The notes: a model not told the origin generated them from the letters alone. A stretch of 64,000 nucleotides of DNA from Zootoca vivipara (GCF_963506605.1 NC_083291.1:36332001-36396000), one strand, 5' to 3'. Shown: positions 8,477 through 50,063, counted from the first letter of the stretch. Numbers and translations are program-made.

Positions 8477-8715
8477 ATGTGGAAGTTCCCCTCTACAAGA
8501 AGTTCCCCCATGTACCAGAACTGGCTGGGGTCTCTCCGGCTGCACCTTCCTCCCTTCACACAGCTGCCACCCCTACCAGGAGACGTCACCGAACTACCTT
8601 CAGCCAGGACCAGCTAGATCACCTGGAGGCAACTTTTGCAAAAAACCATTACCCTGATATTTACTGCCGAGAGGAGCTGGCCAGGGCTATCAAACTCAAT
8701 GAGGCTCGCATCCAG
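8477..8715 (+). CDS. PROP1: PROP1 exon 2 (homeodomain up to ...EARIQ)
   Basis: Acceptor cttcttgccttccag|; encodes RRRHRTTF...EARIQ; donor CAG|GTACC at the canonical paired-like homeobox intron position. Confidence 0.95.
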
Positions 8716-9710
8716 GTACCTGCTCAGTACTTAATGGCCCCAAGAACATATGGGCACTGCCATATTGGATGTGTTGAAAGCAGCCTGCAAGGGGCCTTTT
8801 GGAAACTGGGTCTCCAAGGCACTTACGTTCTGTGCCTTTCTACAACCATGGGACAAAGAAAGTGTGCTTTTTAAAGTCACATTTAGAACTACTTTTCCCC
8901 TTTGGTGTTTTTCATTCTAAGTTAACTGTTTTCCTAATAGTGAGGCAGTATTTTACTAACTGCATTAATGGGTGTATGAACTTGAAGCTCTGAGTTTATG
9001 TAAACTTAAACAGTTCTGTTACATGTATTTCTTTATAAAAAATATTTATAGACCACTAATTTATATTAAAAAATCAGAGTGCTTCACGACAGTTGTACAT
9101 AAAAATACATACAACAAAACCCACAGAAAATAGTTAAAATCAGAAACGAGGTAACTATTGTGGAAAGATGCATTCTTAATTGCCTGAAGGAATGGAAAAG
9201 TTTTCAGCAGGCATTTAAAAGTTGAAACAGAAGGCGCAGGGCCAGACCAATGTTACTGGTTACATGTTGTTGTAACATAGATTCTATACGAGAAACTGAG
9301 GCATCCCCCTCCCAATACCTACTACTTTTAATTTCAACAACAACCAAAAATATTAACCAGAGAACCAGCTGAGTGTGCAAAGTCCAGAAAGCTGCTAAGA
9401 ATCTGCTTGGGCCCACAATTCCAATCTGCCGATACCTATGTATAAATGTGCATCGTTCCCCTTTTGCCTATTGTTTTGAAAGTATAACGAGTCCATCCCA
9501 AACACACTGCACAAGCTTATCTCATAATTTCCTGCTTCTGGCAGATGTTTACCTTCTGCTGATGTTCCATAACGTTCTTGGTTTTCCAAAGGCTTGCACT
9601 GACAAGTTATGAATTTTCAGGAATAATTCTATTCTAAACATCATTGCCGAGATGCCTTGCCCATGGAATACGATTCACAATATGCATTCTCTCTCTCCTT
9701 GTGCTGACAG

Positions 9711-10064
9711 GTTTGGTTCCAGAACCGGCGAGCCAAGCAGCGAAAGCAGGAACGAGCGCTGCCCAAACCAGGCCCCCCTGGTATCCTCTGCCCCCTGCCT
9801 ACACCCCCACCTCGGCAGTACCAATACCCCCCCACTCTTGGGTCACATCATCACCTGCCTCGCTTTCCCTCCACCTACGCTCTGCCACCCCCACCTCCCC
9901 CTGCTACTTCTGCCCAGTTTTCCTGTCCTGCCCCCCACCACCCTCAACCCTCCCATGCTCACGAAGACTGGTACAGCCCTCTGCGCTCCATTGGCTCCCC
10001 CACAGCTGCTCCGCCACCTCCTGTGCTCTCTCTGAGTCTCGACCCCAGCACCCACTGGAACTAA
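9711..10064 (+). CDS. PROP1: PROP1 exon 3 (VWFQNRRAK..., Pro-rich tail, stop TAA)
   Basis: Acceptor ctctctccttgtgctgacag|; open frame to TAA 10062-10064, ending DPSTHWN*. Confidence 0.95.
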   Translation, partial: VWFQNRRAKQRKQERALPKPGPPGILCPLPTPPPRQYQYPPTLGSHHHLPRFPSTYALPPPPPPATSAQFSCPAPHHPQPSHAHEDWYSPLRSIGSPTAAPPPPVLSLSLDPSTHWN

Positions 10065-16489: not shown

Positions 16490-16800
16490 CCCCGCCCTAC
16501 AATCCAGCCAGAACCGGAAGTGCAGGTCTCTATTACTGTATGTGGAAAGGATGAGGAGGTGGAAGCCTCGCGCGAGTGAACAAAGGCCCCGGATGCAACT
16601 CTCTTTTTGGAGGGAAAAAGTTGAACGGATCCCCGGATGTCGCAGCGACCTCTCCCGCACCACAGGCGCAACGGCCGTGCGTAGTAGGCGCATGCGTAGT
16701 TTGCGCACTTAACCCTAGGAAGGCGCGGCGTTCATCACGTGACCTGCCGCGGTGGGCGGGACGCTATAAAAGCGTAGCGCGGGCGGTGCCTCGGCCGCAT
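16490..16800 (+). promoter_or_regulatory. RBM3 CpG-island TATA promoter
   Basis: ETS CCGGAAGT at about 16514; NRF1-like GCGCATGCG 16688-16696; E-box TCACGTGAC 16735-16743; GC box 16754-16759; TATAAAA 16765-16771; Inr-like CATTTT at about 16798. Confidence 0.75.
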
Positions 16801-18008
16801 TTTCAGCTGCTTGAGCCAAGGAAGCTTCTCTTCGGTAAGGCGGAGTGGCGGTCTTGCGGGCTCCCTTTGTTGTTGGTGAAATGCACGGTGCGGGGGGGTG
16901 GGGTGTTCCGACGCTTCCGTTCAAACAAGTACGGCAAGTAACGAGGTAACGGTGGCCGTTCCTCAGTAGCGATGACGTGAGGGGGTGGCAGTGGGGGCCG
17001 CGGCACTAAAGCGCACGCGCGTTCGGAGCAGCGTTCCGAATGCTGATGATATGCGCATGCGGCAGAGGAGCCCTGTTCCCCTCGCGCCGCGGGAGAGGGA
17101 AAACAGCGGTCTGGCGTGGCGCGCGTTGGTTTTGGAACGGGGGGGGCGAGGCGGACATGAGAAGAAGCAGAGCAAGGAAATGGCGGAGGGGGTCCCGGCG
17201 GGCGGGTGGGTGGGGCGCATTCGCGAGGCCATGCAGCGGGCTTCGGCGCCTGCCGCCATCTTTGGTCGTCCGGATTGCCCCTCTTTAAGCTGGGGGTGAA
17301 CAAGATGGCGCTCGAGGCGGGGAAATGGAGGGCGGCCTCGAGGCGGGGAGGGAGAAGTGCCGTTTCCTTCGCTCTCGCGCCACCCCCACCTCTCGCCTTC
17401 CGCTAAGTTTCTCTTCGGGAACGGGCAGTTGAAATATAAACTGAGGCGGGGGCGTGGCTTAAGGTTTGTTCCTTTTTATTTGTTTTTTTTAAAGCCCAAC
17501 AGCAACTCTGAACTCGAAGCTTGTAGGTGCTTGAAGTGGGTCAGATTTAGCAACTGCTTCTGTGACGCGAAGGGCGGGGACGTATTTGCACGGCCATGGG
17601 AAGCTTTCATTTTCCGATTGGAAGTAATGCGCAACCACATGGAGTTTGGCTAGGCGAGGATTGGGGTGGGGAGATGGGGACCTGCAACAGGTTTTCTTAT
17701 TGTGACACCACATGCAGGGTGACTTCTAAAGGAGGGGGAATTAAGCCATATTTGATGAATGAGTGAACAGAGCAAGAGTACTGAAAATATTGGGACTGAT
17801 ACTTAAGTGTGTAGCTTCTCTGGAGAGTTGGGAGTTTAAATTCTTCGCGAACTGGGAAGGGTTGTTTGCAGCTGGATTTTGCTAACTTGCTCTGCAATAA
17901 GCTTTGGTGATTCCTCAAATTCTCGTAATGGAATTGTTCCAGTTTTGGACCTCTGATCCACAGTTGTGCACATTTCTCTTCTTTAGACTCCTCCCTACCA
18001 CCATTATT

Positions 18009-18111
18009 ATGTCTTCTGAAGAAGGAAAGCTGTTTGTTGGGGGGCTGAATTTTGACACTGATGAGCAAGGCCTGGAGCAGCATTTCAGCTCTTTTGGACC
18101 CATTTCTGAAG
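18009..18111 (+). CDS. RBM3: RBM3 exon 2, coding part (RNP2)
   Basis: Acceptor before 17987, ATG 18009, donor G|GTAAGC; 103 coding nt. Confidence 0.95.
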
Positions 18112-18199
18112 GTAAGCAAGTGTGGTGTTGGGGGTGGAGTTTTCCCCTGGGGTCAACATAAAATTGGATAACTTCAGCTATTTTGTTTTCTGTTCTTAG

Positions 18200-18306
18200 T
18201 TGTTGTGATCAAGGATAAAGAGACCCAGAGATCAAGGGGCTTTGGCTTTATCACCTTTGCCAATCCTGAGCACGCATCAGATGCCATGAGAGCCATGAAT
18301 GGAGAG
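18200..18306 (+). CDS. RBM3: RBM3 exon 3 (RNP1 RGFGFITF)
   Basis: ttcttag| acceptor, GAG|GTGAGT donor; 107 nt. Confidence 0.95.
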
Positions 18307-19281
18307 GTGAGTATTTCATTGTGGTGTGATCTGTTACCTGTTCTACTGTGTCTCGGCTGCTTTAATTATATGAGACTAAACAAAAAGGTTTCCCAGGAAA
18401 CGTACTGCTTTGATTTTAGTTTTTGTGAAATGCCTTTAATTAAACTATTTTAGAAAATGGCCTTTTCTTGCTTGCAAGTGTCAACCCAATAGTAGGGAGC
18501 TCTTGCAGTGTATGCACGTTACCTAAATGCACATGTGGTGATAATGCTTCTGATTTAGTGTCAAGGTGAGCGGCTATTTATGTCATAAACTGGTGAGAGA
18601 CAGCTATATTGGTAACAGGCACAGATGCTGCTGGACTTTTGCTTCTTTCAACATTTGACTATTGGCCATACTGTAATGCCTGAGATCTGGCTCTTCTTGG
18701 GGAGCTGGATCCTGCATTCTTCCAGATGTATTGAAAGCTCATTGAGTGGCATTGCTAGTTCACGTTTCCACTACCCTTTTTTACTTTCAGACAAGAACAA
18801 TAATAAGAATTATACCCCACCCCTCTGGCTGAGTTTCCGCAGCCACTCTGAGACAAGCTACTCTCAGATTATTTACCACTCACCTTTACAGTGTTTCCTC
18901 CCAACAGGAATCAGCAGCAGGACTGCTTTCTGTGATTCCAGAGGTTTTTCAGAATACTGACTATCTTTGGGAAATTATTTTTAAGTGGTTCAATTTGCTG
19001 TGTGAAGTGCAAGTTCCAGAATAGCTGCTTTTGCTTGTAGATCTTGTGTAATGCAGGGGGCAGGTACCCAAACTTACACAGGTGGGGAACTTCAGAACTC
19101 AATTTGGAAATAAATCTTCTGAACTCTACAGTATCTTAATAAGAGCAATAGTAATTGGTGAAAAGTCATGTTTTATTAACAATTGGTTATGTGCATATGA
19201 AAATTCATGTAAATAGTTGCTTTGTTTGATCAGCTAATTAGTTAAGCAATGGTCATAATTAAAGTACTTGTTCATTATCAG

Positions 19282-19387
19282 TCTGTAGATGGGCGCCAGA
19301 TAAGAGTTGATCATGCAGGGAAGTCTTCCCGTGGATCTAGAGGTGGCTACTTTGGAGGCAGGGGGCGAGGCCGTGGTTATTCCAGAG
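19282..19387 (+). CDS. RBM3: RBM3 exon 4 ([19 protein letters not shown] region)
   Basis: atcag| acceptor, G|GTGAGT donor; 106 nt. Confidence 0.95.
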
Positions 19388-19496
19388 GTGAGTATAAGGA
19401 GATTGAAACAAACACTTGCATGCATTGGGGTAATGAGGTGGGTGGGTTGCTGGTGGCTTAGCTGTCACTGAAATGGTTTTCTTTTCCTCCTCGGAG

Positions 19497-19572
19497 GTGG
19501 TGGAGACAGAAGCTATGGTGGGCGATACGACAACAGAAGTGGAGGCTACAGCGGTTCCCGGGACTACGGCAG
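19497..19572 (+). CDS. RBM3: RBM3 exon 5 ([24 protein letters not shown])
   Basis: Polypyrimidine tract followed by an unusual GAG| acceptor; AG|GTAATT donor; frame consistent. Confidence 0.88.
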
Positions 19573-19649
19573 GTAATTGTACTGATGTGTTCTCCTTTAA
19601 TGTTCAGTTTTAGGTGAGCAGATATAAAACACAAATGCTTTGTTTTCAG

Positions 19650-19716
19650 AAGTCAGGGAGGTTATAACGATCGCTACTCTTCAGGAGGCTCTTACAGAGA
19701 CAACTATGACAACTGA
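19650..19716 (+). CDS. RBM3: RBM3 exon 6, coding part (..SYRDNYDN*)
   Basis: ttttcag| acceptor; TGA 19714-19716, then G|GTAAGT donor. Confidence 0.93.
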
Positions 19717-20866
19717 GGTAAGTGGATTTTGGGAAGGGAGTGAAAATGCTGTCTTGCCAAAACGCTTGTGAACTTTCAGTGTTCCGACTTTACACTGAGT
19801 AACAGCAGTAACTACAGCTCCCTACTGAGTTGTCAGTATCAAAGATGTTTCTTTTCTTTTTTGTTTATCTGCCATTTGCTCAAATCTAAAACATTGCAGC
19901 CCTCAGTTCACATTACTGGTAAATAACTTTAAGTGCATGTTGGACCTTAAAGAACTCTTAAATTCAAATTGCAAAGTTGTCAGTGCTAACTGGGGGAGGG
20001 CCTGAGATTCCTAGCATCACTAATCTAAAAAAGTCTAGGAGTGGTGAATTGCTGCAACATGTCCGTATGCTTGTGCCTTTATGATTGTACCTGCTTCTTG
20101 TCCTCAGCTCACACCGAGTAAAAATCCTTCCTGAATCAAGATCGTCCTTCCAATGGCCGTATTTATAAAGATTTTTGGAGCTTCGCTGAATCTTGTTTAG
20201 TTACCTACTTGTATCTTCCCCCATATAGCTTTTGTCACATGCAGCCCGAAAGCTTCCTCTACAAGATGGCCTGTTTAGACTTTGCTCAAGAGTTGGTTTT
20301 TTCAAGAGTGGTTTTTAAGCATTTTTGAAATCGGTTTTATTTGTCTTGCTTTCTCAATCCAAGGTTTCTTTTAACGTGACACATGGGGCCCTACAACTTT
20401 AAACAGCTGGAAGCTGAGCAAACCTTTTTTGAAATAGTGCAGTGCAAGAGTTCAACTCCTAGCATAGTAAGGGAGGGCAACAAATGCAAACCACCTTGGT
20501 ATTAGTAAAAGAATTAAATGATTCACGCTGGTTTAGTAAAAAGCTATTTTACTGTACAAAGTAAATCCAGAAATCAAAACTGAACGCTTTGAGAGGTTCT
20601 TGAAAATGTTTGTTTATATTGTCCTTTTTTTACTGGAAGAAACGTGCATAATTCAATTGACATTGTATTTGAAGTGGATAAGGAAGTTCCTGTACTGAGT
20701 TTTTGGCTTTACGAAGCCCATTAAAATCCCATCTGAAACAATTCTCTGCTCTTGACGTTTGACATCACATTGCACCGCACAACTTTGATAGCGACAAGGA
20801 AGCAGAAGCACGTTGGGCCTCACCTAGGTAAATCCCAGGGTTGGTACCCAAGTAATAAATTTGATA

Positions 20867-21116
20867 CAGTGGTGCCTCGCTAGACGAATTTAATTCGTTC
20901 CATGGGTCTTTTCTCATAACAAAAATTTCGTCTAGCGAATCCCATAGGAATGCATTGAATTAATTGAATTTCAATGCATTCCTGTGGGAAACCGCGATTT
21001 GCTAGACGAATTTTTCTTAAAACGAATTCGTCTAGCGAGGCAACCTCCACTAGAAAAAACTTTTCATTAAGCAGAAATTTCATTAAGCAGGGCATTTGTT
21101 AAGCGAGGCACCACTG
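20867..21116. mobile_element. Tc1/mariner (Tigger-like) MITE
   Basis: Same TIRs, TA TSD. Confidence 0.9.
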
Positions 21117-23224
21117 TATACACTAATACTTAAGCGGTTGGTGTGAAATGGTGGAAACAGGAAATCTTCAACATGGGGAAGTGGAAACATGTCTGTTCCT
21201 TAAACTGGCTATAGGATATTTTAGCATGACTTTAAGCTATAACTGTAGCATCTTGTTAGTCATGTTGTATCTGAATAATTTTGTATCTAAATGTTAATAT
21301 ATTACCCTTCTCTGCATCAACCAACACATGATTCCCTAGAATGTTTATAGCTGTGCCAGTGCTATCCTGGGGCAATGAATCTGGGTAGTGGCTGGTGGCG
21401 GTGAAATACCTGTGGAGTCTTGTGTTTCAAACAAGGATCCCAGTGGAGTTCAATACAGTGTTAACTGCAAATCTTGGGCTTTCTTTCTTAGTCTTCAAAC
21501 AGTGAATTATTTAGCTGAGCCTTTATTAGTGAAGGCAAATCATTATTTTTGGTTTGGGAGTCACTACAGAGGGACCAAAATATGGGATGCCAAGCCAAAA
21601 CACGTGTGATGCAAAACCCTGTGCCCTATGCTTAAACCTTCATTTAAGTTCAGTGTTAAAACCTAGAATGGGTTGGTTCTCCTTGCTACAATAGTAGTAC
21701 ACAGTATTGCTGTTGCTGGAGAGGAAGACTTTGGAAGGACCTGCCTCCTTATACAAATGCTAAAGTAGGATAATGTGTCCTACTACAATTGGAAAATTTC
21801 AGCTGTCAGATGAGCTGGTGGAGAGGGAAGTTTTTGGAACTGGGGGGCCTTGAGGCTTTGTTCAGGGTTAAGGCTGAACTGATATTGGGCCTAGATGGGC
21901 CTACCTGTAGTTAGCTCTGTCCTGTTCTTACACTGTGAGAATTCTCTGCTAGCGTGTGGAAGCCAGTGTCCTTGGAGACCCCGAAGTGTGTTGTGCCTCC
22001 TTCAGTGCGATCCATGTGAGACGAAAGCTGCTCTTGGCTAGTTCATTTGTGGAAATAGTCCTGTATTTCGAGGTAACTTTTTTGCTCATGTCTGCATCTT
22101 CCCTCCCACAGAGCTCCATTCTTGTGGCTACAGCAAATCACTGATTCTTATTTCTTTGACAAACGAACTGGGCAAGTTTGGGGTCTTCTCAGACCCCCCA
22201 AGAACTTGGACTGAATCTGCTCCTTTTTTTTTATCTGGGGTGGGAGGGCCTATCTGGCTGTTGCGACTTGAGATTTGCTTTCAAAAACTTAAAGGGAAGG
22301 TAGTTGGCCAAACAGTACTTGGGTTCATCCAGCTGCATTTGCTGTTTTGTCCAATATCTTGTAATTGTGCCTTGTGCTGACCTTGGACTGTTAATTGGGA
22401 AGACTTCCGATTGCAACATTGTTTGGGTGTGGGAGGCTTCTATTTCCACTTAAAACTTTTCCAATTTTTAGTGCATATGGTGGCTTTTGGACAGGAATCT
22501 AAAAGTGGGAGAAAAATCTGAACTTAATAACTTGGGGAATCTCCCAAGGGCTAGGTGAACAGCATCACCTAGGCTTGGAATATCCTGTTAGACATGTATA
22601 ATCTGAACACAATGAGAATTTGAATGAACTTGTGTTAAGTGACACTGCCTTGTTTTTGACAGGTTAGAAGAGATGATGGTGGCTATTCTATCCTGAAAAA
22701 GTGTTGGCCACACTATCTTGAAAGAAGTGATGGAATGGAACAGGGACTACTACTCTTTGGATCCTGAACTTCAGCTACGAAATAAACTTTCTCCCGCATA
22801 AAAGTAAACACATATTCTTAAAAGAAAACTCCTTTGCTTTCGTATTCAGTAGTTTAAGCATGGCTATGTGTTCCTGTGCCATTAAATTGCGGCTATGGTA
22901 CAAATTGATTTTGGCTATGCAAAAGTAAATAGATCAAACTTCCATTGGAGATGATCAGAAGCATGTTACTAGTGAATTGGTACTTCACTAAGCAGTATAG
23001 TGTTCTGCTTGTGCAAGAAGTGATGGCAGTGAATAGCTATGGTCACTTGTTCCTTGTAGCACTTGATGAAAGTAACGTGGCCCATACCTTGTATATGATA
23101 AACTTGTGACCAACTTGCTCATTTGGATGCCACAGAAGTTACCATTTAAATTTTCTAACTTTAATAAGCAATTGCCAGTAGTTTTTTTCTTCAAAACCAG
23201 AAACTTCATGCCTCAATGCTCACA

Positions 23225-23468
23225 CAGTGGTGCCTTGACTTACGAATTTAATCCGTTCCGAAGGCACCTTCGTAGGTCGAAAAATTCACAAGTCGAAAAA
23301 CACCATTGGAAATGCGATTTCCCATAAGAATGCATTGGAAACGGAAAAATACGCGGTATCTAAAACCGCCACAGTTTCCTTTCGGATGTCGTAAGCGCGC
23401 GGCCATTAGTCCCATTCGTAAGTCAAAAAATTAGGTTGTCGAGATGTTCGTAAGTCAAGGTACCACTG
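23225..23468. mobile_element. Tc1/mariner (Tigger-like) MITE
   Basis: TIRs CAGTGGTGCCTTGACTTACGAA/TTCGTAAGTCAAGGTACCACTG-TA. Confidence 0.85.
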
Positions 23469-26400
23469 TATCTGCTTTTTTCATATCTAGGGCACCATTA
23501 TATAATGACTGACCCATTCTTTTCTTGCAGGGTTCCTATAGCTACTGGAATATTAAGTGGACAAGAGGAAGATGCCTCTTGCAGAGACTTGTTCAGCCAT
23601 CCAGTCAGGTTTGTTTATTTTTTAAAACCCATTAAATTAGATTTATCTGACGGGAACAGGAGCAGCAAGTTCAATTGGTTTGAGTTTAGGTTGGATTTCT
23701 GTGTTAAAAGGTCTTTGCACAAACTCCTGTAAGAGAGTATTAACTGACTTTATCACATTAAATCTGAGTTCTGTGTGCTAATTTGTTTTCTTGCATTCCG
23801 TATTAGGTTAAGTGTCATTACTGGAATGAACTTATCAGCTGGCAGCCCAGTGGAGCAAGTAGATTACTACGGGCCGAGCATTCAATACTGTTGGAATATA
23901 AGTGCTTGTCAGGAGGCTGACTGGCTAAGAAGTGGGAAGTGCTCAAACGTGAACTGAATTTAAAGAATTGTGGGTGCTCAATCATGTGAAACAGCACTTT
24001 CTGAAATGTTTAATATGATTTGTAAAATATGAAAGCTGTATGTGTGTGTGTGTGTTTTGGGGTAGGCTTGTGCAGCACTTGAGCTAAAATCTTTTAATGA
24101 GACATAACTGGAAGAATGTCTTAAATCCTAACACCAAATGATGTAAAATTTAAATAAAACAACTATTCTGCATGTGCTTTGAATTCCAAATATGTTGAAC
24201 TATGGCTTCTAATAAAAATGAAACAATAACTGACTTTAGTGTTGTGTTCAGCTTGCTTTCTACACATCAGTCTTAACACATCTACAACCTTATAGGGTAA
24301 GCAGCTGATTAACATTAAAGTAGGGTGCATTGACTGTACCAACTCCTTGCATATCGGACAAGAGTAGGCAAAGGACTACAAGTGTGGACTTAAATGTGTA
24401 TATATGATAGGTATTCTATCATACCTCGAAAAATGTGTATAAGAAATGCAGAACATGCCTCAGTAGAAAAGACAGGAACCCTCATGACTTGGATTAACTA
24501 GCTATGTGCATGATTTTCTATTTGGGAATTTATTTAGTGATCAGAATGCATAACATCAGTCACTCCTAAATTCGGATCCACAGGGATATGGACTGTTGAG
24601 GTACTTGTCAACCAAAGTACACTTGGGGCAAATAAACACATCCCCTCAGAAAACTACATATAGCTACTAAGGCTAGAACTCAAACCCCCTGAAATATTTA
24701 CATCCTATTCCCAGACTTTGTCCATTAGAAATTCAAATCAAAATGGATACAAGAAAGCAATAGCTATTCACAAGTTCTAGTGAGTTTTTTTTTTCCTATA
24801 TACTTTTGCTTTGGGTGGTAGCTTGGTTCAATTATTACTGGTCTCAGTAACCTGCAGGAAATGCTGTAGCATGCTTGAAAAGAGGGAATAAAAGGTCTGG
24901 AATGGGCAAGTCCACTGTGAGGTTTCATAATGCAAGTAGAAGCAATGTTTAATAAACGTTCAAAATTGCCTTCCATTAGGAACTTGAATTAACCTTGCAC
25001 CAGAATGTAAATTGTTTTGCTGCATTGCACTAGTTCTGCCTTCAGATTTGCTTTATCTAGTCCTATTGCAATGTGAAATCCTACATGGGAAATTCATTGT
25101 TGAATGGAAAACATACAAGTCTAAATCTGAGAGTACTGTGCAAAATTAGCTAGGCACCAGGCACATTTTGCACCTGTCTTTTGACCGCTTGTGACCAAGT
25201 GAAGATGTCTGGGCGCAAGGGCGCACCTTATGTTTTCACCATCTGGAGGGGTGTGTCTGGGAATCCTTGGATGTGGACTGTTGTCACACACTAATAGGCT
25301 ATTCCTGTGGAATTCCGAGTTATACTTTATTTGCACAATCAGAATGAATTTCGGGAACTATAATGCTTTTTCTGTGCATCCTGGAGCCATTAAGAAAAAA
25401 GATAGGACTAGGCCAATATATATGTGAATTGTTCCTGGATAAAGTGACTTCTCATAGCTCTTAACCTAGCTCACATTTCATCCAAAAATGCCAACTGAAC
25501 ATTTAATTTTCGCAACTGCAACCTTTGTTCAAAGAGCCATTTGGCACCCAGATTATGTATCTTTAACACTGGGAGTGCTGGATGTTGCTTCATCCTCTAA
25601 ACCGCCCATGGCAAAGTTAGGACAACTAGCAAGATTTCACTCATGTTCTTGCCTATTGTGATGGGTGTGCTCCTTTTCACCTGTTCTCCATATTGTTTGG
25701 TAATATGCTTCCATGGAAGATTTAGTGTCTTTGATTCCATTTGCACATGAAGAGTGTTGTAACATGCCTAGTTTCTAAGCATGTATCCATAACAAAGAAT
25801 GATACTCATAAAATAGGGATCTGGGCTGTTTCCATTTCTGTACATAAACTTGACAGTTATATTAAGAGCCTTTGTTTTTTACACTGGTTTTCACAAAGCT
25901 TACACGTACTGCTCCTTAAGAGAGCTCATGAGCAATGAAAGTCTTCCGTTCCTTTCAGCGGAACACATTTTCCTACTGAGTGATCAAGATTAGTATAAAA
26001 TCGTAACTTAAGCAAATACCCTCTCTTGTAAAGTGTATGAAACTTGAGAGGAATCTGGGCGATGGCTTAATTTAGCCTTGATCACCATCAACTAGCAACC
26101 AGGCGGGCACAAATTTTTCCTTTGTTTTCTTGGCGCTCTCACATGGGAAGGGCCTGGTTCATTGTCACGGCGTCCGCCTCACGGGCTCCAAGCTCCATCC
26201 CCAGCAGCATCTCCATGTGGGCTTGGGAGAGCAACCCGGCCCGAAACCCTCCGAGAAAAAGCAGCTGCCAGTCCGTGTAGAGCAGAGGCAGGCAACCTCC
26301 GGTCCCTGGAGCCTCACGAGGCAGACCCCTGCCATCATACACGTCCGGCGGGTAAAACTTTGGCTCCATTAGCATCACCCCCTTCATCCAACTCCCTCCT

Positions 26401-26689
26401 TGAAACCCTGGAGAGCCGCTGCCAGCCAGGGCAGGCAAAGCGGAGCTAAATGGGCCAACGGCCAGAGTTCGGCATAAGGCGGCTTCCCGGCGCGTTCCTG
26501 TCTCTCGAGATGGGGGGGGGGCGAAGGTCTCGCGCCCTTGAGCGGGGCCCTCCGGAAGGATTCCTCCTTCCCGCATTGTTTGGGCCGCAGCCTTTTCTCG
26601 CCTTCCGAATGAAGACCTGCTGGCGAAGGGCGCGCTTCCTCAGGAGAAAGCGAGGCGAGCTCGAGTAGGCCGCGGCTTTTGTCAGTTAT

Positions 26690-26900
26690 CTTTTGAAAGA
26701 GGGGAGGGGTGGGATGCGGAGGGGGAGGGGCAGCGCGCACGCGCACGTGAGGCGAGGAGGCCGCGGATATGAAATGGGGTAGCGGGAAGGAGGGGGAGGC
26801 GTGGTCGCCATTGTGATTTGGCCCCGCCTTCCGCGCGCCCAGCCAATCCCGGCTCGGGAGCTGCGTGTCGGGCGTGGCCTAGCCGCAGCCTCACTTTCAT
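26690..26900 (+). promoter_or_regulatory. TATA-less CpG-island promoter of the CIRBP-like paralog
   Basis: E-box CACGTG 26744-26749, GC boxes, CCAAT 26843-26847; YY1-type AAAATGGCGG and GCGGCCATTTT in intron 1. Confidence 0.65.
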
Positions 26901-26914
26901 TCTCCTCGCTTGCG

Positions 26915-26936
26915 TCTCTCTCTCTCTCTCTCTCTT
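26915..26936. repeat. (TC)n tract in exon 1/5'UTR of the paralog
   Basis: Direct reading. Confidence 0.9.
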
Positions 26937-29605
26937 TCGGCGCCATCGCGATACCCTCTTGCCTCAGTGGCTAACGGCTCTCTTCGCATCCTGCTCAGAG
27001 ACCGGCTTCGGTGAGTGCTTTGACGCCGGGGAAGCCCCAGGCCGCTGCAGGAAAGCCGTAGGAGGGGCGCTGCATCGAGCATGGAAGGGGAGCAGGGAGA
27101 GTAACGGGGAAGAAAGCTACCTCTTCGCCGTGTGGGGCGGGGGAGGCTGAAGGGAGAGACGCTACACAAAATGGCGGCGGCTGCTCATAAAGAACGAGAG
27201 GGCCCCTCTGCGCACACTTGTGTTTGAAACGCCGTTCTCTCAGTCTCCTTCGCAAGGAGTAAAGTGCGTTGCTGAAGACCACCAGGAAGGGAGGAAATTG
27301 TTCCAGGGGGATGGAGAGCATTAGACGTGGCCAAGTCCGCTGTAGCAGCGGGTTTAACGCGGGGGCGGGAGAGGAGGAGCCCTTGGCTTACTGCGCCTGC
27401 GCGAAGGCTGTTCGCGGAGCGCGGGACAGCAGCGGGGTAGTCTTTGCGCATGCCTGCTGGGGTCTCAGTCCGTAGAACGTGAAACGCGCTGAGCTCGCCT
27501 TCCCGCATTCTGTTCAGACCACGTGTTCGCGGCCATTTTAGCAGGGGGGAGGGGTGGACTGGTTGGGGCAAAGAATGGAAGCCCATTCTCTCTGCAGGTC
27601 TGCGTTGATAAGCCGTCGGGAGCCACTGCAACACTCACATCGAACCTTCCTTCGATGACTTGCTCCTGATATTGATGCACTAAGATTTCAGGATCTTACC
27701 ATACGCACCTGATAGATGAAAGCTGCCTCAGGTCGTCAGCCGCATGTTACCAAAATTATTGACCACAGCATTCTAGTAGTTGCTGCTCAAGGTGGAGTCA
27801 ATACCAGGCTTCATAAGATGGTTCGAGAAGCCCTGATCTTACATATTTTTTGCTTGAAAGCAAGATCCACCTGTATGGCTGAGGACTTAATCCAAGCAGA
27901 TACTCATTTTCCCGTAAACTAGAAAACGCGCTGAACGATTGTTGGGGTTCATCATTGCACATGGGTGTAAAACATGTCAAGCCGGAAGGGTGGTAAATAA
28001 GCTATAACAACAATTAGCCCTCATAAAATACTAGTTACAATGAGGTTGCCATAATAATAATATTTTATTTATACCCTGCCCATCTGGCTGGGTTTCCCCA
28101 GCCACTCTGGGTGGCTTCCAACAAAATATTAAAAATAAAAAAACAACTTGATTCAAAGTGTGTTCACCCTAATGCACTTTAATCATAAATAGTATTAAAG
28201 GTAGGGAAGTGGCTTAACACTGCCACCTCCTTTTCATATGTGAAAAAGACTGCCTGCATGCTTACTTCATTTAGCCATCCATTTTTCTGAAGCAGGCATT
28301 GATGAAAATTGAGAAGTGCTTATTAGCATTTGGCCTTGGCATGTCCAAACCTCAACGTCTGCCTGATAGCTTATCTGACGCTCTGGACTGGAGAAAGCAA
28401 TTCAGATAGGCACTTCGAGTGGGGGAAATAAGCATCTTCCATCTCTGTTTGGCAATTAACACAGTTATATCACTGGGAAAACAAATTAACTGCTCATTTG
28501 TAGCTAATTCACTCCTGCCTGCTTATAGCTAACCCCAGTCACCTGTATCTTAATTACCTCTAGAATAATGAAGAACTGTTAACAGCTAGGCTCATTCTGT
28601 GTCCAGTAAAATGTACTTTTATGCACTCATAAGACTGTCCTTTACTGTAGAAGGCACAAGATATAAACACTTCTAACATTAAAAGTAATGGCACAAGAAC
28701 ACCTTGTCTGGTATTAAGATGAAGCACCAAAAGAACAAGAGGGCAACATTAGCAGTCCTACCTTTGAGTAAACTTTTTAGAAAATTCTTTACTCCTGCAA
28801 ATGGCCACACACATATATCCACTTTTTGACCACAGTATATGCTGCCTTATTGCATGTTTATTTGAGAGTCAGTCACATTGTTTTCAGTGATGCTTATTCC
28901 CAGATAAGTTTGCACAGGATTACAGTTAAGACTAGTTCTGTGCACAATCGCTTGGGAGTAAGATCTACTGGAAATAAAAAATAGGCAACATTGATTTTTC
29001 AGTTTGTTGCTTCCAGATAAATAAATGGCTGCAAATAAAAACAGAAGAAGTAATTTTTCAGCTTCACCATGTCTCTGCCTCAGGGCATTCAGGGGAAAGT
29101 AAACATGTTAAGTTTACAATGCTCAGTTGACAAAGATAATTATGGGTCTCAGTTCAGTGGTAAACAGATAGTAAAACAAAGTTAAGAGGCACCCGGCCTG
29201 GAAGTGAGACTGCTACTGGAAGTCAGGCAACTAATGAAGATAAGCTACAAAAGGAAGGTGTTACCCTGGTCAATATGCGCAACCTATACATCAGTGGTGA
29301 TGATCATACAGCAGATTAAGAAGAAGCCTGGCTTTGTACCATATTATTCATTGGTTTAATGAATATTAATTTGCCCCAGTCCAGCAGAAGGAAGGAAACT
29401 GGTTTACAAAAGAGCAGCAGGCCTTGGATGTTTTGCTGACAGGCAAATTAATGATAATTTGTTTTCCTGGAAAATGAAAACGGGATGTTAGTTGTTGGTG
29501 AGCAGCTACTTGTAAATTGCTAGTGTAGCCTGTTACCTTTTGTCCTTATTCCCACATATGTTTGCCATATCTAAACACATTTCTTCCCTACAGATCACTT
29601 CAACA

Positions 29606-29708
29606 ATGGCATCAGATGAAGGAAAACTCTTCATTGGAGGGCTCAGTTTTGACACCAATGAGCAGAATCTGGAGCAGTTGTTCTCCCCCTATGGAGACAT
29701 TGCAGAAG
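29606..29708 (+). CDS. CIRBP-like paralog exon 2, coding part
   Basis: cttccctacag| acceptor before 29594, ATG 29606, G|GTGAGG donor; 103 nt. Confidence 0.93.
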
Positions 29709-30510
29709 GTGAGGAAGGGTGTCGCACCTGATTTTATTCTGTCATTACAGAAGTTCTGAATCTGTTAATGTTTCTGCACCAGGAAACCAATTGGTAGGGA
29801 TTTGGAGTTTGCAAGTGCATACACTCAAACAATGATAGCAACTATACTACCGGTATGATAAGTTAAAAGACTTGTCACATCTGGCATTCAAGGCATGACA
29901 ACTCTTTGGATGAGGCAGAAAATCACCATTCATTCTTGTGGCAAGCAAGAGCCACCATCCCTGATAGAGAGCCCTCAATGACCACATTTGGCCTCACCCC
30001 TGTGTTAATGTCAGCAACCTTGAACGATTTACTAGCAATTCCTGTGCTGTATCACTTCAGATCACAGCTGGAGTTTGCCTGCTTATTCATGTAAAATCCT
30101 TTTTTCTGAACATTCAAAATCAGTGTGTGACGAAGACTGTCCAACTATGTTCATATTGAACAAATGGGGTTTTGTTAACATGAGAGAGCACTTGATACAT
30201 ATCTGCATTCTGAAGTGATACTCCTGGCAATATAAAGTTAATGATGTGCATCTTGCTTTCTCCAAATTGTGTTGTCATTAATACTATGGCTTGCTCATTT
30301 GATTTGTTTCAATATTAATCTAATTAAACTGAAATAGCAAAGCTTGCCATTCAGTCCCATGGCTTGCTTTAGTCATTACCAAACACATCCAGCCTTTCCC
30401 CCAATCCTCTCTAAAACAGTTCTGTAAATACAATAGTTTCCTAGCCCTGTTTAATTTCCTCATCCCTTCCTCTCAACTCTATTTACACTCTTGTGATGTG
30501 AGAAAACCAT

Positions 30511-30737
30511 GAATCATAGAATCCTAGAGTTGGAAGAGAACACAAGGGCCATCCAGTCCAACCCCCTGCGCCAAGCAAGAAACACCATCAAAGCATTCCT
30601 GACAGATGGCTGTCAAGCCTCCGCTTAAAGTCCTCCAAAGAAGGAGACTCCACCACACTCCTTGGAAGCAAATTCCACTGTTGAATAGCTCTTACTGTCG
30701 GGAAGTTCTTCCTAATGTCAGGAAGTTCTTCCTAATG
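30511..30737 (-). mobile_element. CR1 LINE 3' fragment
   Basis: GAATCATAGAATC tail repeat, CR1 3' hairpin region and RT C-terminal remnant. Confidence 0.8.
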
Positions 30738-30803
30738 AAGTCAGCCTGCTTCCTTCCCCTACCCCACAGGTTATGAAAGCATCCTTTACTATATGTTTTA
30801 GCA

Positions 30804-30940
30804 CAGGCTTCCTCAACCTCAGCCCTCCAGATGTTTTTGAGACTACAATTCCCATCATCCCTGACCACTGGTCCTGCTAGCTAGGGATCATGGGAGTTGT
30901 AGGCCAAAAACGTCTGGAAGGCCAAGGTTGAGGAAGCCTG
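30804..30940. mobile_element. hAT MITE (about 136-bp family)
   Basis: TIRs CAGGCTTCCTCAACC/GGTTGAGGAAGCCTG; TSD TTTTAGCA. Confidence 0.92.
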
Positions 30941-31485
30941 TTTTAGCACAATGTTTCAATATAGCCTTAATTTTATAAAACCTTGATCCAAAGTGGTCTT
31001 GATTATTTATAGCTGGCAAAGTGGGATGAGGGGCATGTATAGGTTATATTTGAAGAATGCCAATGATACATGGCTGGATCTTCCTAATTTTCAAAGTGAT
31101 AAATTGTATTGAAAAAATACAAAGGTATCAAGATGTCTAGTTGGGAAGGATTGTGCGTCGATATTACAGACCTCTTGATGTATAGATTTGAGCTTTCCTG
31201 GAAGCAAGCCCTTGTAATTGAGAGATTGGTTAATAAATTACATGAGCTCATTAATAACAGCATCTTATTTCCCCAGTAAGATAGACAGCAGGGTTTTTCT
31301 TATTCTTCAGCATCCAATTCTTGAAGCTTATTTCCCAGATGCCCCCGTGTGGCTATAATGTCCTTCCAAGCAGTCTTTGAGTCTGAAGTGGGGCTAAAGA
31401 CGGAACCTGGCAAGGGACACTGGCTGTCAACTACATGCAGAAAAAGAGCCAGGAAAATAATCTGTTAAAATTTTTCTCTCTCCAG

Positions 31486-31592
31486 TGGTTGTGGTGAAAG
31501 ACAGGGAGACGCAGCGGTCCAGGGGTTTTGGTTTTATTACCTATTGCCGTCCTGAAGATGCCAAGGATGCCATGAGGGCTATGAATGGAGAG
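31486..31592 (+). CDS. CIRBP-like paralog exon 3 (RNP1)
   Basis: ctctctccag| acceptor, GAG|GTAAGT donor; 107 nt. Confidence 0.93.
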
Positions 31593-31643
31593 GTAAGTGT
31601 CGCCCGCATAGATTGTTCACCATTTCTTATTCATTCTCTATTG

Positions 31644-31779
31644 CAGGCATCCCCAAACTTCGGCCCTCCAGATGTTTTGGACTGCAGTTCCCATCATCCC
31701 TGACCGCTGGTCCTGTTAGCTAGGGATCATGGGAGTTGTAGGCCAAAACATCTGGAGGGCCGCAGTTTGGGGATGCCTG
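31644..31779. mobile_element. hAT MITE (about 136-bp family)
   Basis: TIRs as at 3826; TSD CTCTATTG. Confidence 0.92.
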
Positions 31780-32383
31780 CTCTATTGCATCCACTTTCTT
31801 TGCAACTTCCTAGAATATGGAAGGCTATTAGATGTGATCTGTCATGATTGTATTGCAAAATGTTGTAACTACCTACTCTTACTTTGGTGGGTGTGCAGCA
31901 CAGTGAGCAGCAATAATTTTTAGTCCTGAATTACAGCTCCAGGATTGCTTAATTCACCTTTTGTTACAGCAACTTCATGATGCTCTTCTAAACTCGGGTG
32001 GGGAACCTGTGGCTTGTCAGCCCAGAATCCACATTTGGCCCATGATGCCATTTCACTCCCAAGTTACACTCAACTGATGTCATAAGTGATGTCAGTTGTG
32101 TGGAAAAGTCAGGTCTGTTTGGTTGGGGTGCACCAACCAATGAGATACACAAAACTGGTTGTCCTGAATTCAGCTTTAAAAAAAAATTCAATAATAAAAT
32201 TTATTTAAATATTTAATTTAATTAAATATATATTCTGTGGGTATTCCATAGCATTCAGCAGAACAGGGATTTGTTCTGCTTCCCAGTGGCAGAGGATGCA
32301 AATCATTCAAAACAAAATTTTAATCCAAGCTTTGATTATATTGGACTCCTGCCTCCTTGTTAGCAGGTTGGAAGAGTAGCATA

Positions 32384-32709
32384 AAAAGGTAAAGGGACCC
32401 CTGACCATTAGGTCCAGTCATGACCGAGTTGGGGGTTGCGGCGCTCATCTTGCCGGCGTACAGCTTCCATGTGGCCAGCATGACAAAGCCGCTTCTGGCA
32501 AACCAGACAAACTGAAACACTGTTTACCTTCCCGCTGTAGCGGTACCTATTTATCTACTTGCACTTTGACGGGCTTTCGAACTGCTAGGTTGGCAGGAGC
32601 TGGGACCAAACAACGGGAGCTCACCCTGTTGCGGGGATTCAAACCGCCGACCTTCGGATTGGCAAGCCCTAGGCTCTGTGGCTTAACTCACAGCACCACC
32701 CGCGTCCCT
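32384..32709 (-). mobile_element. Sauria SINE
   Basis: tRNA-derived head and ACCTTT tail; 16-bp TSD TTGGAAGAGTAGCATA. Confidence 0.93.
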
Positions 32710-32776
32710 TTGGAAGAGTAGCATACATCTTGGTTAAAAGCTCTGGCTCTGATTTGTTCTCTTGCTTCTCCCCAAG

Positions 32777-32870
32777 TCTGTGGATGGGCGTCAGATCAGA
32801 GTGGACCAGGCTGGAAAATCCTCCCGTGGCTCTTCTGGAGGCAGAGGGCGTGGACGTGGATTCTCCAGAG
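32777..32870 (+). CDS. CIRBP-like paralog exon 4
   Basis: cttctccccaag| acceptor, G|GTGAGT donor; [16 protein letters not shown]. Confidence 0.92.
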
Positions 32871-32954
32871 GTGAGTGGCTTGTGCCCTTCAGTGCTAACT
32901 GCTTAGTGGTGTGGGAGCAAATAGGCTTGATAAACATTCATATCTTTGCTGCAG

Positions 32955-33033
32955 GCGGTGGAGGATATGGAGGTGGCCGTTATGATAACAGAAGCGGTGG
33001 CTATGGTGGATCTAGAGACTATTATGGCAGCAG
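32955..33033 (+). CDS. CIRBP-like paralog exon 5
   Basis: gctgcag| acceptor, AG|GTAAGA donor; [25 protein letters not shown]. Confidence 0.9.
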
Positions 33034-33714
33034 GTAAGACCAACACACGCACCTAAGAGATACTTGGTTGCAGCAGATTGTGGTACCTACAAATATGATG
33101 TTGAGATCATGATCCTTTGTGTTCTGTATTAGAATAACAGTTTGAGAGTTCCTTCTGAACCATTAAACTTTTCCTTAGAGGTAGCAAAAGAGAGCTGTTG
33201 AAGTGCTCCTGATTATTTTAGCATTTGGAAATAGGCTTAGCCCGCTGTATGCTGCTATGGCATGGAAGCTGCAGGTATTGCATGCTGTTTTAGTAACAAC
33301 AGGCTATCATGTAGAAAGGAAGATTCGTCCTGCCATGCCTCAGTTTTTACTCAGTTTTTATAACCTCCTTACTAAATTGGTCCTCTCTTAATGACCAATT
33401 TATATACAGCACTTAAATAAGAATGAGGTTTATAAATGAGCATTTCCGTAAAGGTTCTTTTTGTAATTTTGTCATAATATTGATATTTTAATATGCCTAC
33501 CTGTACAATGGGACAGCAGCCCCAAAATAAGTTCTGGGTGGTTCTTCAGGTCCCCAGAGCAGATTTTTTTTCATGGGCGGGAGGAGGCAAAGAAGAATCC
33601 CCACTGCATGAGTGGATGGATGCCTGCTCATACTACACTGAATCTCACTCAATGTATAGCATCTAGCAGCAGCTCAGCAGTGACATATCAGTCTTCTGTT
33701 CTTTTTCCCTCAAG

Positions 33715-33778
33715 GAATCAAGGAGGCTATGGAGACCGTTACTCTGGGAGCTCCTACAGAGACAACTACGATAACTAG
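33715..33778 (+). CDS. CIRBP-like paralog exon 6 (..SYRDNYDN*)
   Basis: ttccctcaag| acceptor; TAG 33776-33778 directly followed by the GTAAGT donor. Confidence 0.9.
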
Positions 33779-35331
33779 GTAAGTGTATGTCTAAGCACCA
33801 TCTGCTTCTTATATCAGGATAGCTACTAAAGCATAGGACTTAGTTCTCTCACGTCACAGACTAACTTTGTCAGCAAAACTCCTTTCCTCATCAGCAAGTC
33901 TAGCATAATTGCGTATGCAGAATTGGCCTGTTGCTGGAGTAAAGCAAAAAATAAAAATGGGACAGTTAAACCCATCCACACACTTTGTTTTTAAGGGACA
34001 CTGTTGAGCCAGCCTATAAAAACCATGACTACAGCCTTTTACACACGGAAACTTTCTCCGAACCGTAAGTTTATGGGAATTAAACCTCTACATTCCTAAT
34101 ACGGTCTTGCTTTTGTTGAAAAACAAAAAAGGTGTATGCGAATACTCTTTATTGGCAGATAATTTCCCCCCTGCATCATCTCCAAGGCTGCGAACAGTTG
34201 CCCTGGGCTGGGAGGAGGGAATCTAGGTTAGCATCAAGCACCAATGTTCTTCAGTGTACTTTATGATCTGTACCTGCTTCTTGTCCTCAGCTTGCACCGA
34301 GCATAAATCCTTCCTGAATCAAGATCGTCCTTCCAATGGCCGTATTTATAAAGATTTTTGGAGCTTCGCTGAATCTTGTTTAGTTCTCTACCTGTATCTT
34401 CCCTTTTTGTAGTCTTACCACAAGCAGCCCAACAGCTTCTGCTACAGGATGGCCTGTTAGAGCTTTCTGAAGGAAAACATTTTAATTTGCCTTTTTTTTT
34501 TACAGGTGTGTTTAAGCATTTTTGAATACATACTTTTATTGCTTTCCCCCACCTCCACCCCCTGGATTTCTTTTAACACACCAAGATGGGGGTTCTGACC
34601 TATTCTTCACCTAAAATTCCCCAGAGTCTGAGCAAGGTGTGAGGATCCTCCTTGTTTTTATAAATGCATTAATACCTTGTAGTTTTGTAAAAGTCCTATG
34701 GTGTAGCAAGCAAGGGGTATGGTGGAAGGCAAAACCCCCTTGATTATAAAGGGAGACGTGTGTTTGATCTTCAGAAATCAGAATTTATACTGTATGATGT
34801 ACCTAGAACCGAAGCTTGCAGAACTTGCAAGTTGTTCTTGAAAAACCGTTTGTTTATATTTTTTTTTAAACTGGAAGACACACATGTAACTCGATATTGT
34901 ACTAAAAGTGGTTAAGGAATTCCTGTATTCAGTTCTTTGGCTTCACGAAGCCTATTAAATGCCCTTCTGAAAATGAAATTTGTTCTTGACGTTTTAACAC
35001 TTCAACTATGCCCAATTTAAAGCCATAATACATGGCACATATTTTAAACTGCTGTGTATTTGTTAAACGGATACCTTGGAGAGGAGATGCCAAGGAATTT
35101 CAGTACTTAGTTCAGTGGGCTAAAGCCTACAAGCATTTGTATTTGGGTGCTTTGTATATTGTCAGTTTGAAAGATTGTGCCTTGTGTTTGGGATTCTTTC
35201 TATATTGGCTTGTGTGCCACAGAACCTCTGCCGTTGAGGTATTCTGGGGTAAGCATGTAAGATACCAGCCTGGCCTGTGGAGCCTGAACTGGATGTATCC
35301 ATGAATATAGGCTATCATCCCTTGGGTGGTA

Positions 35332-36412: not shown

Positions 36413-36413
<1 letters not shown>

Positions 36414-36463
<50 letters not shown>
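36414..36463. repeat. (CTG/CAG)16 trinucleotide repeat
   Basis: Uninterrupted 50-nt tract. Confidence 0.98.
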
Positions 36464-36641
36464 AGCACTTACTGATCTTGGTGGTGCCTGAGGTAGTGCC
36501 TCCTGCTTCACTGCTTTTTCTGTTCTTTATTTCTTTATAATTTACTGGAGCTACCACAAGCCTGGTTCCTTGGTTGGGTACGGTTTTGAGGCAGATACAA
36601 GAGAGTTTCCACTGTTGGCTTTTTAAGCCATTTATATACAC

Positions 36642-49147: not shown

Positions 49148-49214
49148 CACAAGATCAACAAGATGCGAAGGGAGTAATCCTTATTTACTGGTGCAGCCCT
49201 CAGCACCCGCTTAC

Positions 49215-50043: not shown

Positions 50044-50063
50044 CCAAGCGTTGCTCTAACCGC

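What the first reader, a model, noticed from the sequence alone, without database searches (positions are those of the whole stretch)
16799..34975. Tandem pair of cold-shock RNA-binding protein genes (RBM3 and a CIRBP-like paralog) in a lizard
Seen: two intact, same-strand 7-exon genes about 6 kb apart with identical intron positions and phases; 19 of the first 86 residues differ. Copy 1 has RBM3-type residues ([30 protein letters not shown]). Copy 2 has CIRBP-type residues ([25 protein letters not shown]) but ends in the RBM3-type YRDNYDN*. Known: mammalian RBM3 and CIRBP are unlinked single genes, and RBM3 is usually discussed as mammalian. Inference: copy 2 is a third family member, an old tandem duplicate at the RBM3 locus that kept ancestral residues. 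That could give an ectotherm two thermally responsive RBPs with different set points.
Basis: partly seen in the sequence, partly recalled or inferred. Interest (0 to 1): 0.85.

Follow-up and report, generated by a model that had tools for sequence, protein, structure and literature searches.

The report
Ancient RBM3 and CIRBP-like gene pair
This lizard has two intact neighbouring cold-shock RNA-binding protein genes, RBM3 and an old sister gene found in reptiles and egg-laying mammals but not in placentals or marsupials, which databases variously label CIRBP, CIRBP-like or RBM3, so reptile "CIRBP" temperature studies may be mixing two genes.

Summary
Two same-strand genes (152 and 148 aa) have five coding exons each, all with GT-AG introns in identical phases. 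In both, the stop codon lies 1 nt before a 3'UTR intron. 19 of the first 86 residues differ.

The core inference also holds.
- Copy 1 is RBM3. It is 100% identical to the lacertid RefSeq protein "RBM3-like X1".
- Copy 2 is not CIRBP. Other squamates have a separate 171-176 aa CIRBP.
- Copy 2 groups with RBM3 in trees (support 96/90 to 100/99). An AU test rejects a copy 2 + CIRBP clade (p=0.002 on full length, 0.06 on the RRM alone).
- Copy 2 orthologs exist in geckos, snakes, lizards, turtles, platypus and echidna. Accession numbers next to RBM3's and two chimeric gene models point to the same tandem layout.
- The duplication therefore predates the mammal-sauropsid split. Synonymous sites are saturated (dS about 1.8).
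- No copy 2 was seen in therians, birds or crocodilians.
- RBM3 changed faster, which is why copy 2 looks CIRBP-like.

The pair is already annotated under inconsistent names, but I found no paper that describes it.

The parts
16760..16850 (+). Copy 1 (RBM3) exon 1, 5'UTR; boundaries approximate
   Evidence: Two reading frames here match the in-frame N-terminal extensions of the Liasis (P0112) and Pogona (P0384) RBM3 gene models. The region lies in a GC-rich stretch. No reads were available.
18009..19716 (+). Copy 1 (RBM3) coding region: exons 18009-18111, 18200-18306, 19282-19387, 19497-19572, 19650-19716; 152 aa
   Evidence: The protein is 100% identical to P0381, RefSeq 'RBM3-like isoform X1' of lacertids. 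It has RRM_1 at E 5.7e-25. Its best solved relative is the RBM3 RRM 7eb1.
20108..20745 (+). Copy 1 exon 7 (3'UTR), with conserved blocks and ATTAAA at 20720
   Evidence: The acceptor motif ends at 20107. The stretch 20077-20290 is 87.6% identical to 34259-34472, and a second block containing the poly(A) signal is also shared.
26900..27020 (+). Copy 2 (CIRBP-like) exon 1, 5'UTR; boundaries approximate
   Evidence: The frames here resemble the N-terminal extension of the Vipera latastei model P0082. The region is GC-rich, 0.576 over 26-28 kb.
29606..33778 (+). Copy 2 (CIRBP-like) coding region: exons 29606-29708, 31486-31592, 32777-32870, 32955-33033, 33715-33778; 148 aa
   Evidence: The protein is 100% identical to P0336 (UniRef H9GVK5_ANOCA, shared by 9 Bifurcata taxa). 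It has RRM_1 at E 2.1e-24.
34291..34975 (+). Copy 2 exon 7 (3'UTR), with ATTAAA at 34954
   Evidence: It has the same acceptor motif and the same conserved blocks as copy 1.
8581..10061 (+). Upstream neighbour PROP1 (homeodomain exon and last exon)
   Evidence: Pfam Homeodomain matches. The homeodomain exon is 100% identical to Zootoca vivipara 'prophet of Pit-1-like' P0393. In several reptiles PROP1 sits on contigs of the same length as the RBM3 pair.

Best explanation
The stretch holds a conserved tandem pair. Upstream is RBM3. Downstream is its sister paralog, which databases call CIRBP, CIRBP-like or RBM3 and which I call copy 2. The two arose by tandem duplication before mammals and sauropsids split. 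Afterwards the RBM3 RRM diverged faster, while copy 2 stayed close to the ancestral, CIRBP-like sequence. Copy 2 is retained in lepidosaurs, turtles and monotremes. It was not seen in therians or archosaurs.

Both genes encode a single RRM followed by an Arg/Gly/Tyr-rich disordered tail, so both should act as small mRNA-binding chaperones or regulators like mammalian RBM3 and CIRBP. The two share a stop-adjacent 3'UTR intron and a 3'UTR block that is better conserved than the coding sequence, which suggests shared post-transcriptional control.

What is shown: the gene models, intactness, age, phylogenetic placement and taxonomic spread. What is inferred: expression, temperature responsiveness and any division of labour between the two.
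For: - Gene models and intact RNP motifs.
- Copy 1 equals lacertid RBM3-like X1. Copy 2 equals a protein identical across 9 squamate taxa, 1 aa from the gecko protein, 97% identical to turtle and 89% to echidna.
- Age: the paralogs are 72-81% identical in coding DNA, with dS about 1.8, dN 0.15 and dN/dS about 0.08.
- Trees: an RBM3 + copy 2 clade has support 99/98, 98/91, 96/90 and 100/99. The copy 2 clade includes platypus and echidna. An AU test rejects copy 2 + CIRBP at p=0.0023.
- Shared derived features of RBM3 and copy 2 against CIRBP, amphibians and fish: I52, R65 and E70 in the RRM, a shorter exon 4, and a stop right after YDN (sequences).
- A separate CIRBP exists in squamates, turtles and platypus.
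- Adjacency elsewhere: consecutive accession numbers in Varanus, Chrysemys, platypus, Pogona and Heteronotia, equal contig lengths, and chimeric Terrapene and Sphenodon models (RBM3 RRM plus copy 2 tail).
- Hint of expression: small assemblies, guessed to be RNA, hold 0.19-0.43 of the sampled words of 29500-34975. The exonic fraction of that stretch is about 0.21.
Against: - There is no direct RNA evidence.
- On the RRM alone the AU test is only marginal (p=0.06). The tails are low-complexity and could have been homogenised between neighbours.
- By plain similarity the copy 2 RRM scores higher against CIRBP (150.7 bits) than against RBM3 (126.9 bits).
- Absence from archosaurs and therians is only absence from hit lists.
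- A separate CIRBP was not looked for in this genome itself.
- No amphibian or fish ortholog of the RBM3 + copy 2 lineage was identified, so the lower bound of its age is open.
Confidence: 0.8

Rival explanations
1. The pair is much older than amniotes. A tandem arrangement of CIRBP-family genes would date to early jawed vertebrates, and amphibian and fish co-orthologs of RBM3 and copy 2 exist but are hidden among slowly evolving 'cirbp' genes.
For: Fused two-unit gene models in skates (Rhinoraja, Narcine) and bonefish (Albula) show same-strand neighbouring family members in other vertebrates. Frogs and caecilians have two or three 'cirbp' genes on one chromosome-sized contig. Amphibian and fish sequences form an unresolved grade.
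Against: No amphibian or fish sequence falls inside the RBM3 + copy 2 clade, which has 100/99 support. The two skate units group together, so they look like independent duplications.
Confidence: 0.1
2. The grouping of copy 2 with RBM3 is an artefact of gene conversion between neighbours. Copy 2 would really be an older paralog or CIRBP-derived, partly overwritten by RBM3.
For: The strongest support comes from full-length alignments that include the repetitive tails. On the RRM alone the AU test gives p=0.06. A 3'UTR block is 87.6% identical between the copies. The copy 2 RRM is more similar to CIRBP than to RBM3.
Against: Coding exons are only 72-81% identical with saturated dS, so there has been no recent conversion of them. 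The RRM-only trees still give 98/91 and 96/90. Three RRM positions are shared derived states. Intron 3 shows no similarity between the copies.
Confidence: 0.05
3. Copy 2 is the lizard's only CIRBP, moved next to RBM3 by translocation, and is not a third member.
For: It has CIRBP-type N-terminal residues, and CIRBP is the best solved-structure match. Several databases name it CIRBP.
Against: True CIRBP of 171-176 aa, with the longer exon 4 and an ATHNE-type tail, exists in many squamates, turtles and platypus alongside copy 2. The AU test rejects the clade.
Confidence: 0.02
4. Copy 2 is an unexpressed relic or pseudogene.
For: No RNA reads could be examined.
Against: The ORF and splice sites are intact. 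The protein is 100% identical across 9 squamate taxa and 97% to turtles despite saturated synonymous change. Word shares in small assemblies match the exonic fraction.
Confidence: 0.02

Closest known systems
RBM3 (mammalian cold-inducible RNA-binding motif protein 3; RRM structure 7eb1)
   Same: Copy 1 has 160.9 bits to 7eb1, with nearly every RRM residue shared. It sits in the RBM3 clade at 100/99. It has the same YRDNYDN end. Copy 2 is the sister lineage of RBM3 and shares the short exon 4, the stop position and the I52, R65 and E70 states.
   Different: The lizard locus is linked to PROP1. Therian RBM3 lies on Xp11.23 next to WDR13 and TBC1D25 (my knowledge; PMC7841431 reports no RBM3 in the chicken WDR13/TBC1D25/EBP block). 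Therians have no neighbouring copy 2. Cold induction and the RBM3 poison exon were not shown here, and intron 3 of the two copies shares no sequence.
CIRBP (cold-inducible RNA-binding protein; RRM structures 1x5s, 5tbx)
   Same: The copy 2 RRM is closest to CIRBP by similarity (150.7 bits). It has the MASDEGKLF start, [15 protein letters not shown] and VDQAG.
   Different: Copy 2 is not an ortholog. It falls outside the CIRBP clade, and AU rejects that placement. It is 148 aa against 171-176 aa, lacks the extra RGG segment of exon 4, and ends at YDN instead of a ...SYATHNE-type tail. True CIRBP co-exists with it in squamates, turtles and platypus.
Database entries for the same gene: H9GVK5_ANOCA / XP_003224509.1 (Anolis 'CIRBP'), A0A8C3S5Z0_CHESE (Chelydra 'RBM3'), XP_028922921.1 (platypus 'CIRBP-like')
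   Same: These are identical or near-identical proteins (0-16 differences) and so are orthologs of copy 2.
   Different: Their names conflict (CIRBP, CIRBP-like, RBM3, RBM3-like, RRM domain-containing). No paper found in the library treats it as a separate family member.

Membership tests
CIRBP/RBM3 glycine-rich cold-shock RBP family | A single N-terminal canonical RRM with intact RNP2 (KLF[VI]GGL) and RNP1 (RGFGFIT[FY]) | tested here: met
   RRM_1 matches at E 5.7e-25 (copy 1 equivalent, P0381) and 2.1e-24 (copy 2 equivalent, P0336). Each RRM exon also hits on its own. The motifs were read directly.
CIRBP/RBM3 glycine-rich cold-shock RBP family | A short Arg/Gly/Tyr-rich low-complexity C-terminal tail, with a total length of about 150-175 aa | tested here: met
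   The translations are 152 and 148 aa with RGRGRG, GGY and RDNYDN tails.
CIRBP/RBM3 glycine-rich cold-shock RBP family | Induction by mild cold or temperature-dependent splicing | not testable with these tools
No temperature series was available.
RBM3 orthology (copy 1) | Falls in the RBM3 clade with mammalian RBM3 | tested here: met
   The RBM3 clade has 100/99 support in all trees.
RBM3 orthology (copy 1) | Therian neighbours WDR13 and TBC1D25 | tested here: inconclusive
   The only neighbour identified by a tool is PROP1 upstream. ABT1-like ORFs downstream were recognised from memory only. The window was not searched systematically for WDR13 or TBC1D25.
CIRBP orthology (copy 2) | Groups with CIRBP orthologs in a tree | tested here: not met
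   Copy 2 groups with RBM3 (96/90 to 100/99). AU rejects copy 2 + CIRBP at p=0.0023 on full length and 0.06 on the RRM only.
CIRBP orthology (copy 2) | Is the only CIRBP-type gene in the lineage | tested here: not met
   A separate 171-176 aa CIRBP exists in Varanus, Anolis, Elgaria, Python, Rhineura and Crotalus, and also in turtles and platypus. This was not checked in this genome itself.
Amniote-wide third paralog (copy 2 lineage) | Orthologs in several amniote orders, lying next to RBM3 | tested here: met
   Orthologs were found in geckos, skinks, lacertids, agamids, iguanians, varanids, snakes, five turtle families, platypus and echidna. Adjacency is only indirect: consecutive accession numbers, equal contig lengths and chimeric models.

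The most novel reading that the evidence does not exclude
Copy 2, not true CIRBP, may be the gene (or part of the signal) reported as warm-induced 'CIRBP' in reptile sex-determination and sex-reversal studies. On this reading the RBM3/copy 2 pair is a two-gene thermal sensor with opposite or offset set points. Its loss in therians, and apparently in archosaurs, would track lineages with endothermic ancestry.

Supporting hints are few. Pogona 'CIRBP' is about 10-fold up at 36 C (PMC8049264), and turtle Cirbp is up at the warm temperature (PMC5352168), the opposite of mammalian CIRBP. The copy 2 ortholog is named CIRBP in the Pogona, Anolis, Chelonia and Varanus annotations. Nothing here shows which paralog those studies measured.
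Probability: 0.12. Interest if true: 0.8.

Novelty: new member of a known kind. Interest (0 to 1): 0.45.

Why it matters
RBM3 and CIRBP are the two classic vertebrate cold-shock proteins, studied for neuroprotection, circadian control and reptile temperature-dependent sex determination. If ancestral amniotes had three genes, several things follow.

- RBM3 was born as one half of a tandem pair and then diverged quickly.
- Therians lost the conservative half.
- Reptile and monotreme studies that quantify 'CIRBP' or 'RBM3' need paralog-aware mapping, because the third gene carries all of these names in current annotations.
- The pair offers a natural system for asking how duplicated thermosensitive RNA-binding proteins divide their work in ectotherms.
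- The 3'UTR block, kept at about 88% identity (with a run of about 100 nt almost unchanged) while synonymous sites saturated, is a candidate shared regulatory element.

Tried and rejected
Adjacency elsewhere rests on accession order, contig lengths and chimeric models.
No read evidence exists.
- The joined spliced proteins were not sent to any search tool. I searched exon by exon by reference and used database proteins identical to the spliced models (P0381, P0336) for full-length work. The spliced models were built only inside scripts.
- The search of protein representatives was dominated by multi-RRM proteins. It was useful only for finding fish and skate outgroups.
- Rfam found nothing in the window.
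- The atlas, Pfam and PDB searches did not confirm the ABT1-like ORFs.
- Intron 3 of the two copies shows no similarity above shuffled controls, so they share no poison-exon sequence.
- Paper searches found no description of a third paralog.
- The snapping-turtle CIRBP paper (PMC4858799) is not held.
Full report
**Observation**

The window holds two same-strand genes of the CIRBP/RBM3 family. I located the coding exons from stop-free frames and splice sites.
- Copy 1: 18009-18111, 18200-18306, 19282-19387, 19497-19572, 19650-19716; 152 aa.
- Copy 2: 29606-29708, 31486-31592, 32777-32870, 32955-33033, 33715-33778; 148 aa.

Every intron is GT-AG, and positions and phases match between the copies. 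In both, the stop codon (TGA in copy 1, TAG in copy 2) sits 1 nt before a donor, so a 3'UTR intron follows.

Each RRM exon hits Pfam RRM_1 by itself.

Exon 7 begins at 20108 in copy 1 and 34291 in copy 2, behind an identical acceptor motif. Homologous ATTAAA signals lie at 20720 and 34954. Exon 1 is placed only approximately, at 16.76-16.85 kb and 26.9-27.0 kb, from N-terminal extensions of snake and agamid gene models. The gap between the genes is about 6 kb.

**What the copies are**

I searched exon by exon by reference. The joined spliced proteins were never sent to a search tool. Full-length work used database proteins that proved identical to the spliced models.

Copy 1 is 100% identical to P0381, RefSeq 'RNA-binding protein 3-like isoform X1' of Lacerta and Podarcis. 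It is 1-4 residues from the Anolis, Elgaria, Varanus and gecko RBM3 proteins. The upstream PROP1 exon is 100% identical to the Zootoca vivipara protein. The window is therefore probably from a lacertid.

Copy 2 is 100% identical to P0336, a protein shared unchanged by nine squamate taxa (UniRef H9GVK5_ANOCA; Anolis XP_003224509.1, and Varanus and Liasis entries). It is 1 residue from the gecko, agamid and Tiliqua proteins, 97% identical to turtle proteins and 89% to echidna.

Sources name this gene in conflicting ways: CIRBP, CIRBP-like, RBM3, RBM3-like or just RRM protein.

**Is copy 2 the CIRBP ortholog?**

No. Squamates (Varanus, Anolis, Elgaria, Python, Rhineura, Crotalus), turtles and platypus also have a 171-176 aa CIRBP with a longer exon 4 and an ATHNE-type tail.

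Maximum-likelihood trees place copy 2-type proteins with RBM3:
- 99/98 on full length;
- 98/91 on the RRM only;
- 96/90 on the RRM with skate outgroups;
- 100/99 on full length with monotremes, fish and skates.

The RBM3 clade has 100/99 support throughout. The copy 2 clade, including platypus and echidna, has support from 87/83 to 95/86.

On the 78 RRM columns it is marginal (p=0.06).

Direct characters agree with the trees. RBM3 and copy 2 share I52, R65 and E70 against CIRBP, amphibians and fish. They also share the shorter exon 4 and the stop straight after YDN.

Copy 2 keeps the ancestral state at 8 RRM positions where RBM3 changed, against 3 the other way. This explains why it scores higher against the CIRBP RRM (150.7 bits) than against the RBM3 RRM (126.9 bits) in the PDB search.

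**Age and selection**

Coding exons of the two copies are only 72-81% identical. Over the first 88 codons, dS is about 1.8 (saturated) and dN is 0.15. With monotreme orthologs in both clades, the duplication predates the mammal-sauropsid split. Both genes are under strong purifying selection.

No copy 2 ortholog appeared from therians, birds or crocodilians in the ranked lists, although RBM3 and CIRBP from those groups did. That is absence from annotation, not proof of loss.

**Tandem arrangement elsewhere**

- Consecutive accession numbers for the pair in Varanus (KAF7243843/44), Chrysemys (XP_005312003/04), platypus (XP_028922920/21), Pogona (XP_020653247/48) and Heteronotia.
- Equal contig lengths for the two genes in Tiliqua, echidna, platypus and others.
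- Ensembl models in Terrapene and Sphenodon that join the RBM3 RRM to a copy 2-type tail. That needs same-strand neighbours.
- PROP1 on contigs of the same length as the pair in lacertids, Eublepharis, Varanus, Sceloporus, Paroedura, Lerista, Hemicordylus and Caretta.

**Regulatory hints**

The start of exon 7 together with its acceptor is 87.6% identical over 217 nt between the paralogs, with about 100 nt almost unchanged. A second block carrying the poly(A) signal is 77% identical. Both blocks are at least as conserved as the coding sequence.

Intron 3 of the two copies shares nothing above shuffled controls (places 32194-32232 left out).

Rfam has no match in the window.

**Expression**

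I sent none of those letters anywhere afterwards.

The look-up of sequencing runs gives only a hint. Small assemblies of the same organism, guessed to be RNA, hold 0.22-0.43 of the sampled words of 29500-34975. Assemblies of three other organisms hold 0.19-0.20. The exonic share of that stretch is about 0.21.

**Literature**

No paper in the library describes a third family member or an RBM3 tandem pair.

Reptile studies report 'CIRBP' as up at warm temperatures: Pogona about 10-fold at 36 C (PMC8049264), and turtles (PMC5352168, PMC11025153). They do not say which paralog was counted. The snapping-turtle paper was not available.

PMC7841431 notes that RBM3 is missing from the chicken block holding WDR13, TBC1D25 and EBP. 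This fits a different location for sauropsid RBM3.

**Verdict**

It is already present in public annotation under muddled names, so this is a new member of a known kind rather than a new kind. The functional idea of two thermal set points is untested.

Noticed in passing
window 8581-8722 and 9708-10061 (+): PROP1 (prophet of Pit-1) lies about 7 kb upstream of RBM3. Its homeodomain exon is 100% identical to the Zootoca vivipara protein. In many reptiles PROP1 sits on contigs of the same length as the RBM3 pair, whereas human PROP1 (5q35) and RBM3 (Xp11.23) are unlinked (the human positions are from my own knowledge).
   Followed up: partly
window 47422-47841, 49203-49484, 49714-50055 (-): These ORFs look to me, from memory, like exons of ABT1/ESF2 (for example a [17 protein letters not shown] stretch). 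Pfam, PDB and the protein atlas gave no confirmation.
   Followed up: partly
window 20077-20290 vs 34259-34472; 20596-20760 vs 34834-34994: The 3'UTR blocks of the two paralogs are 87.6% and 77% identical although synonymous sites are saturated. About 100 nt after the exon 7 acceptor are almost unchanged. The second block holds the ATTAAA poly(A) signal of both genes.
   Followed up: partly
window 19645-19652 (+): The acceptor of copy 1 exon 6 is a NAGNAG site (CAGAAG). This would explain the RefSeq X1 and X2 isoforms of 152 and 151 aa, which differ by one Arg.
   Followed up: no
P0006 (Terrapene) and P0013 (Sphenodon) database proteins: These Ensembl 'RBM3' models are chimeras of RBM3 exons 2-3 with the copy 2-type exons 4-6. 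They are either read-through transcripts or mis-joined predictions across the tandem pair.
   Followed up: partly
P0191 (Rhinoraja), P0200 (Narcine), P0202 (Albula) database proteins: These predicted proteins contain two complete CIRBP-family units in a row. Neighbouring same-strand family members therefore also occur in skates, rays and a bonefish.
   Followed up: no
window 59665-60434 (-) and 56914-57489 (+): Long ORFs here look like LINE reverse-transcriptase and retroelement remnants (recognised from memory). Pfam found nothing for 56914-57489.
   Followed up: no
window 36360-36480: There is a long CAG/CTG-type trinucleotide run, which reads as poly-Q or poly-A in different frames, downstream of copy 2.
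   Followed up: no
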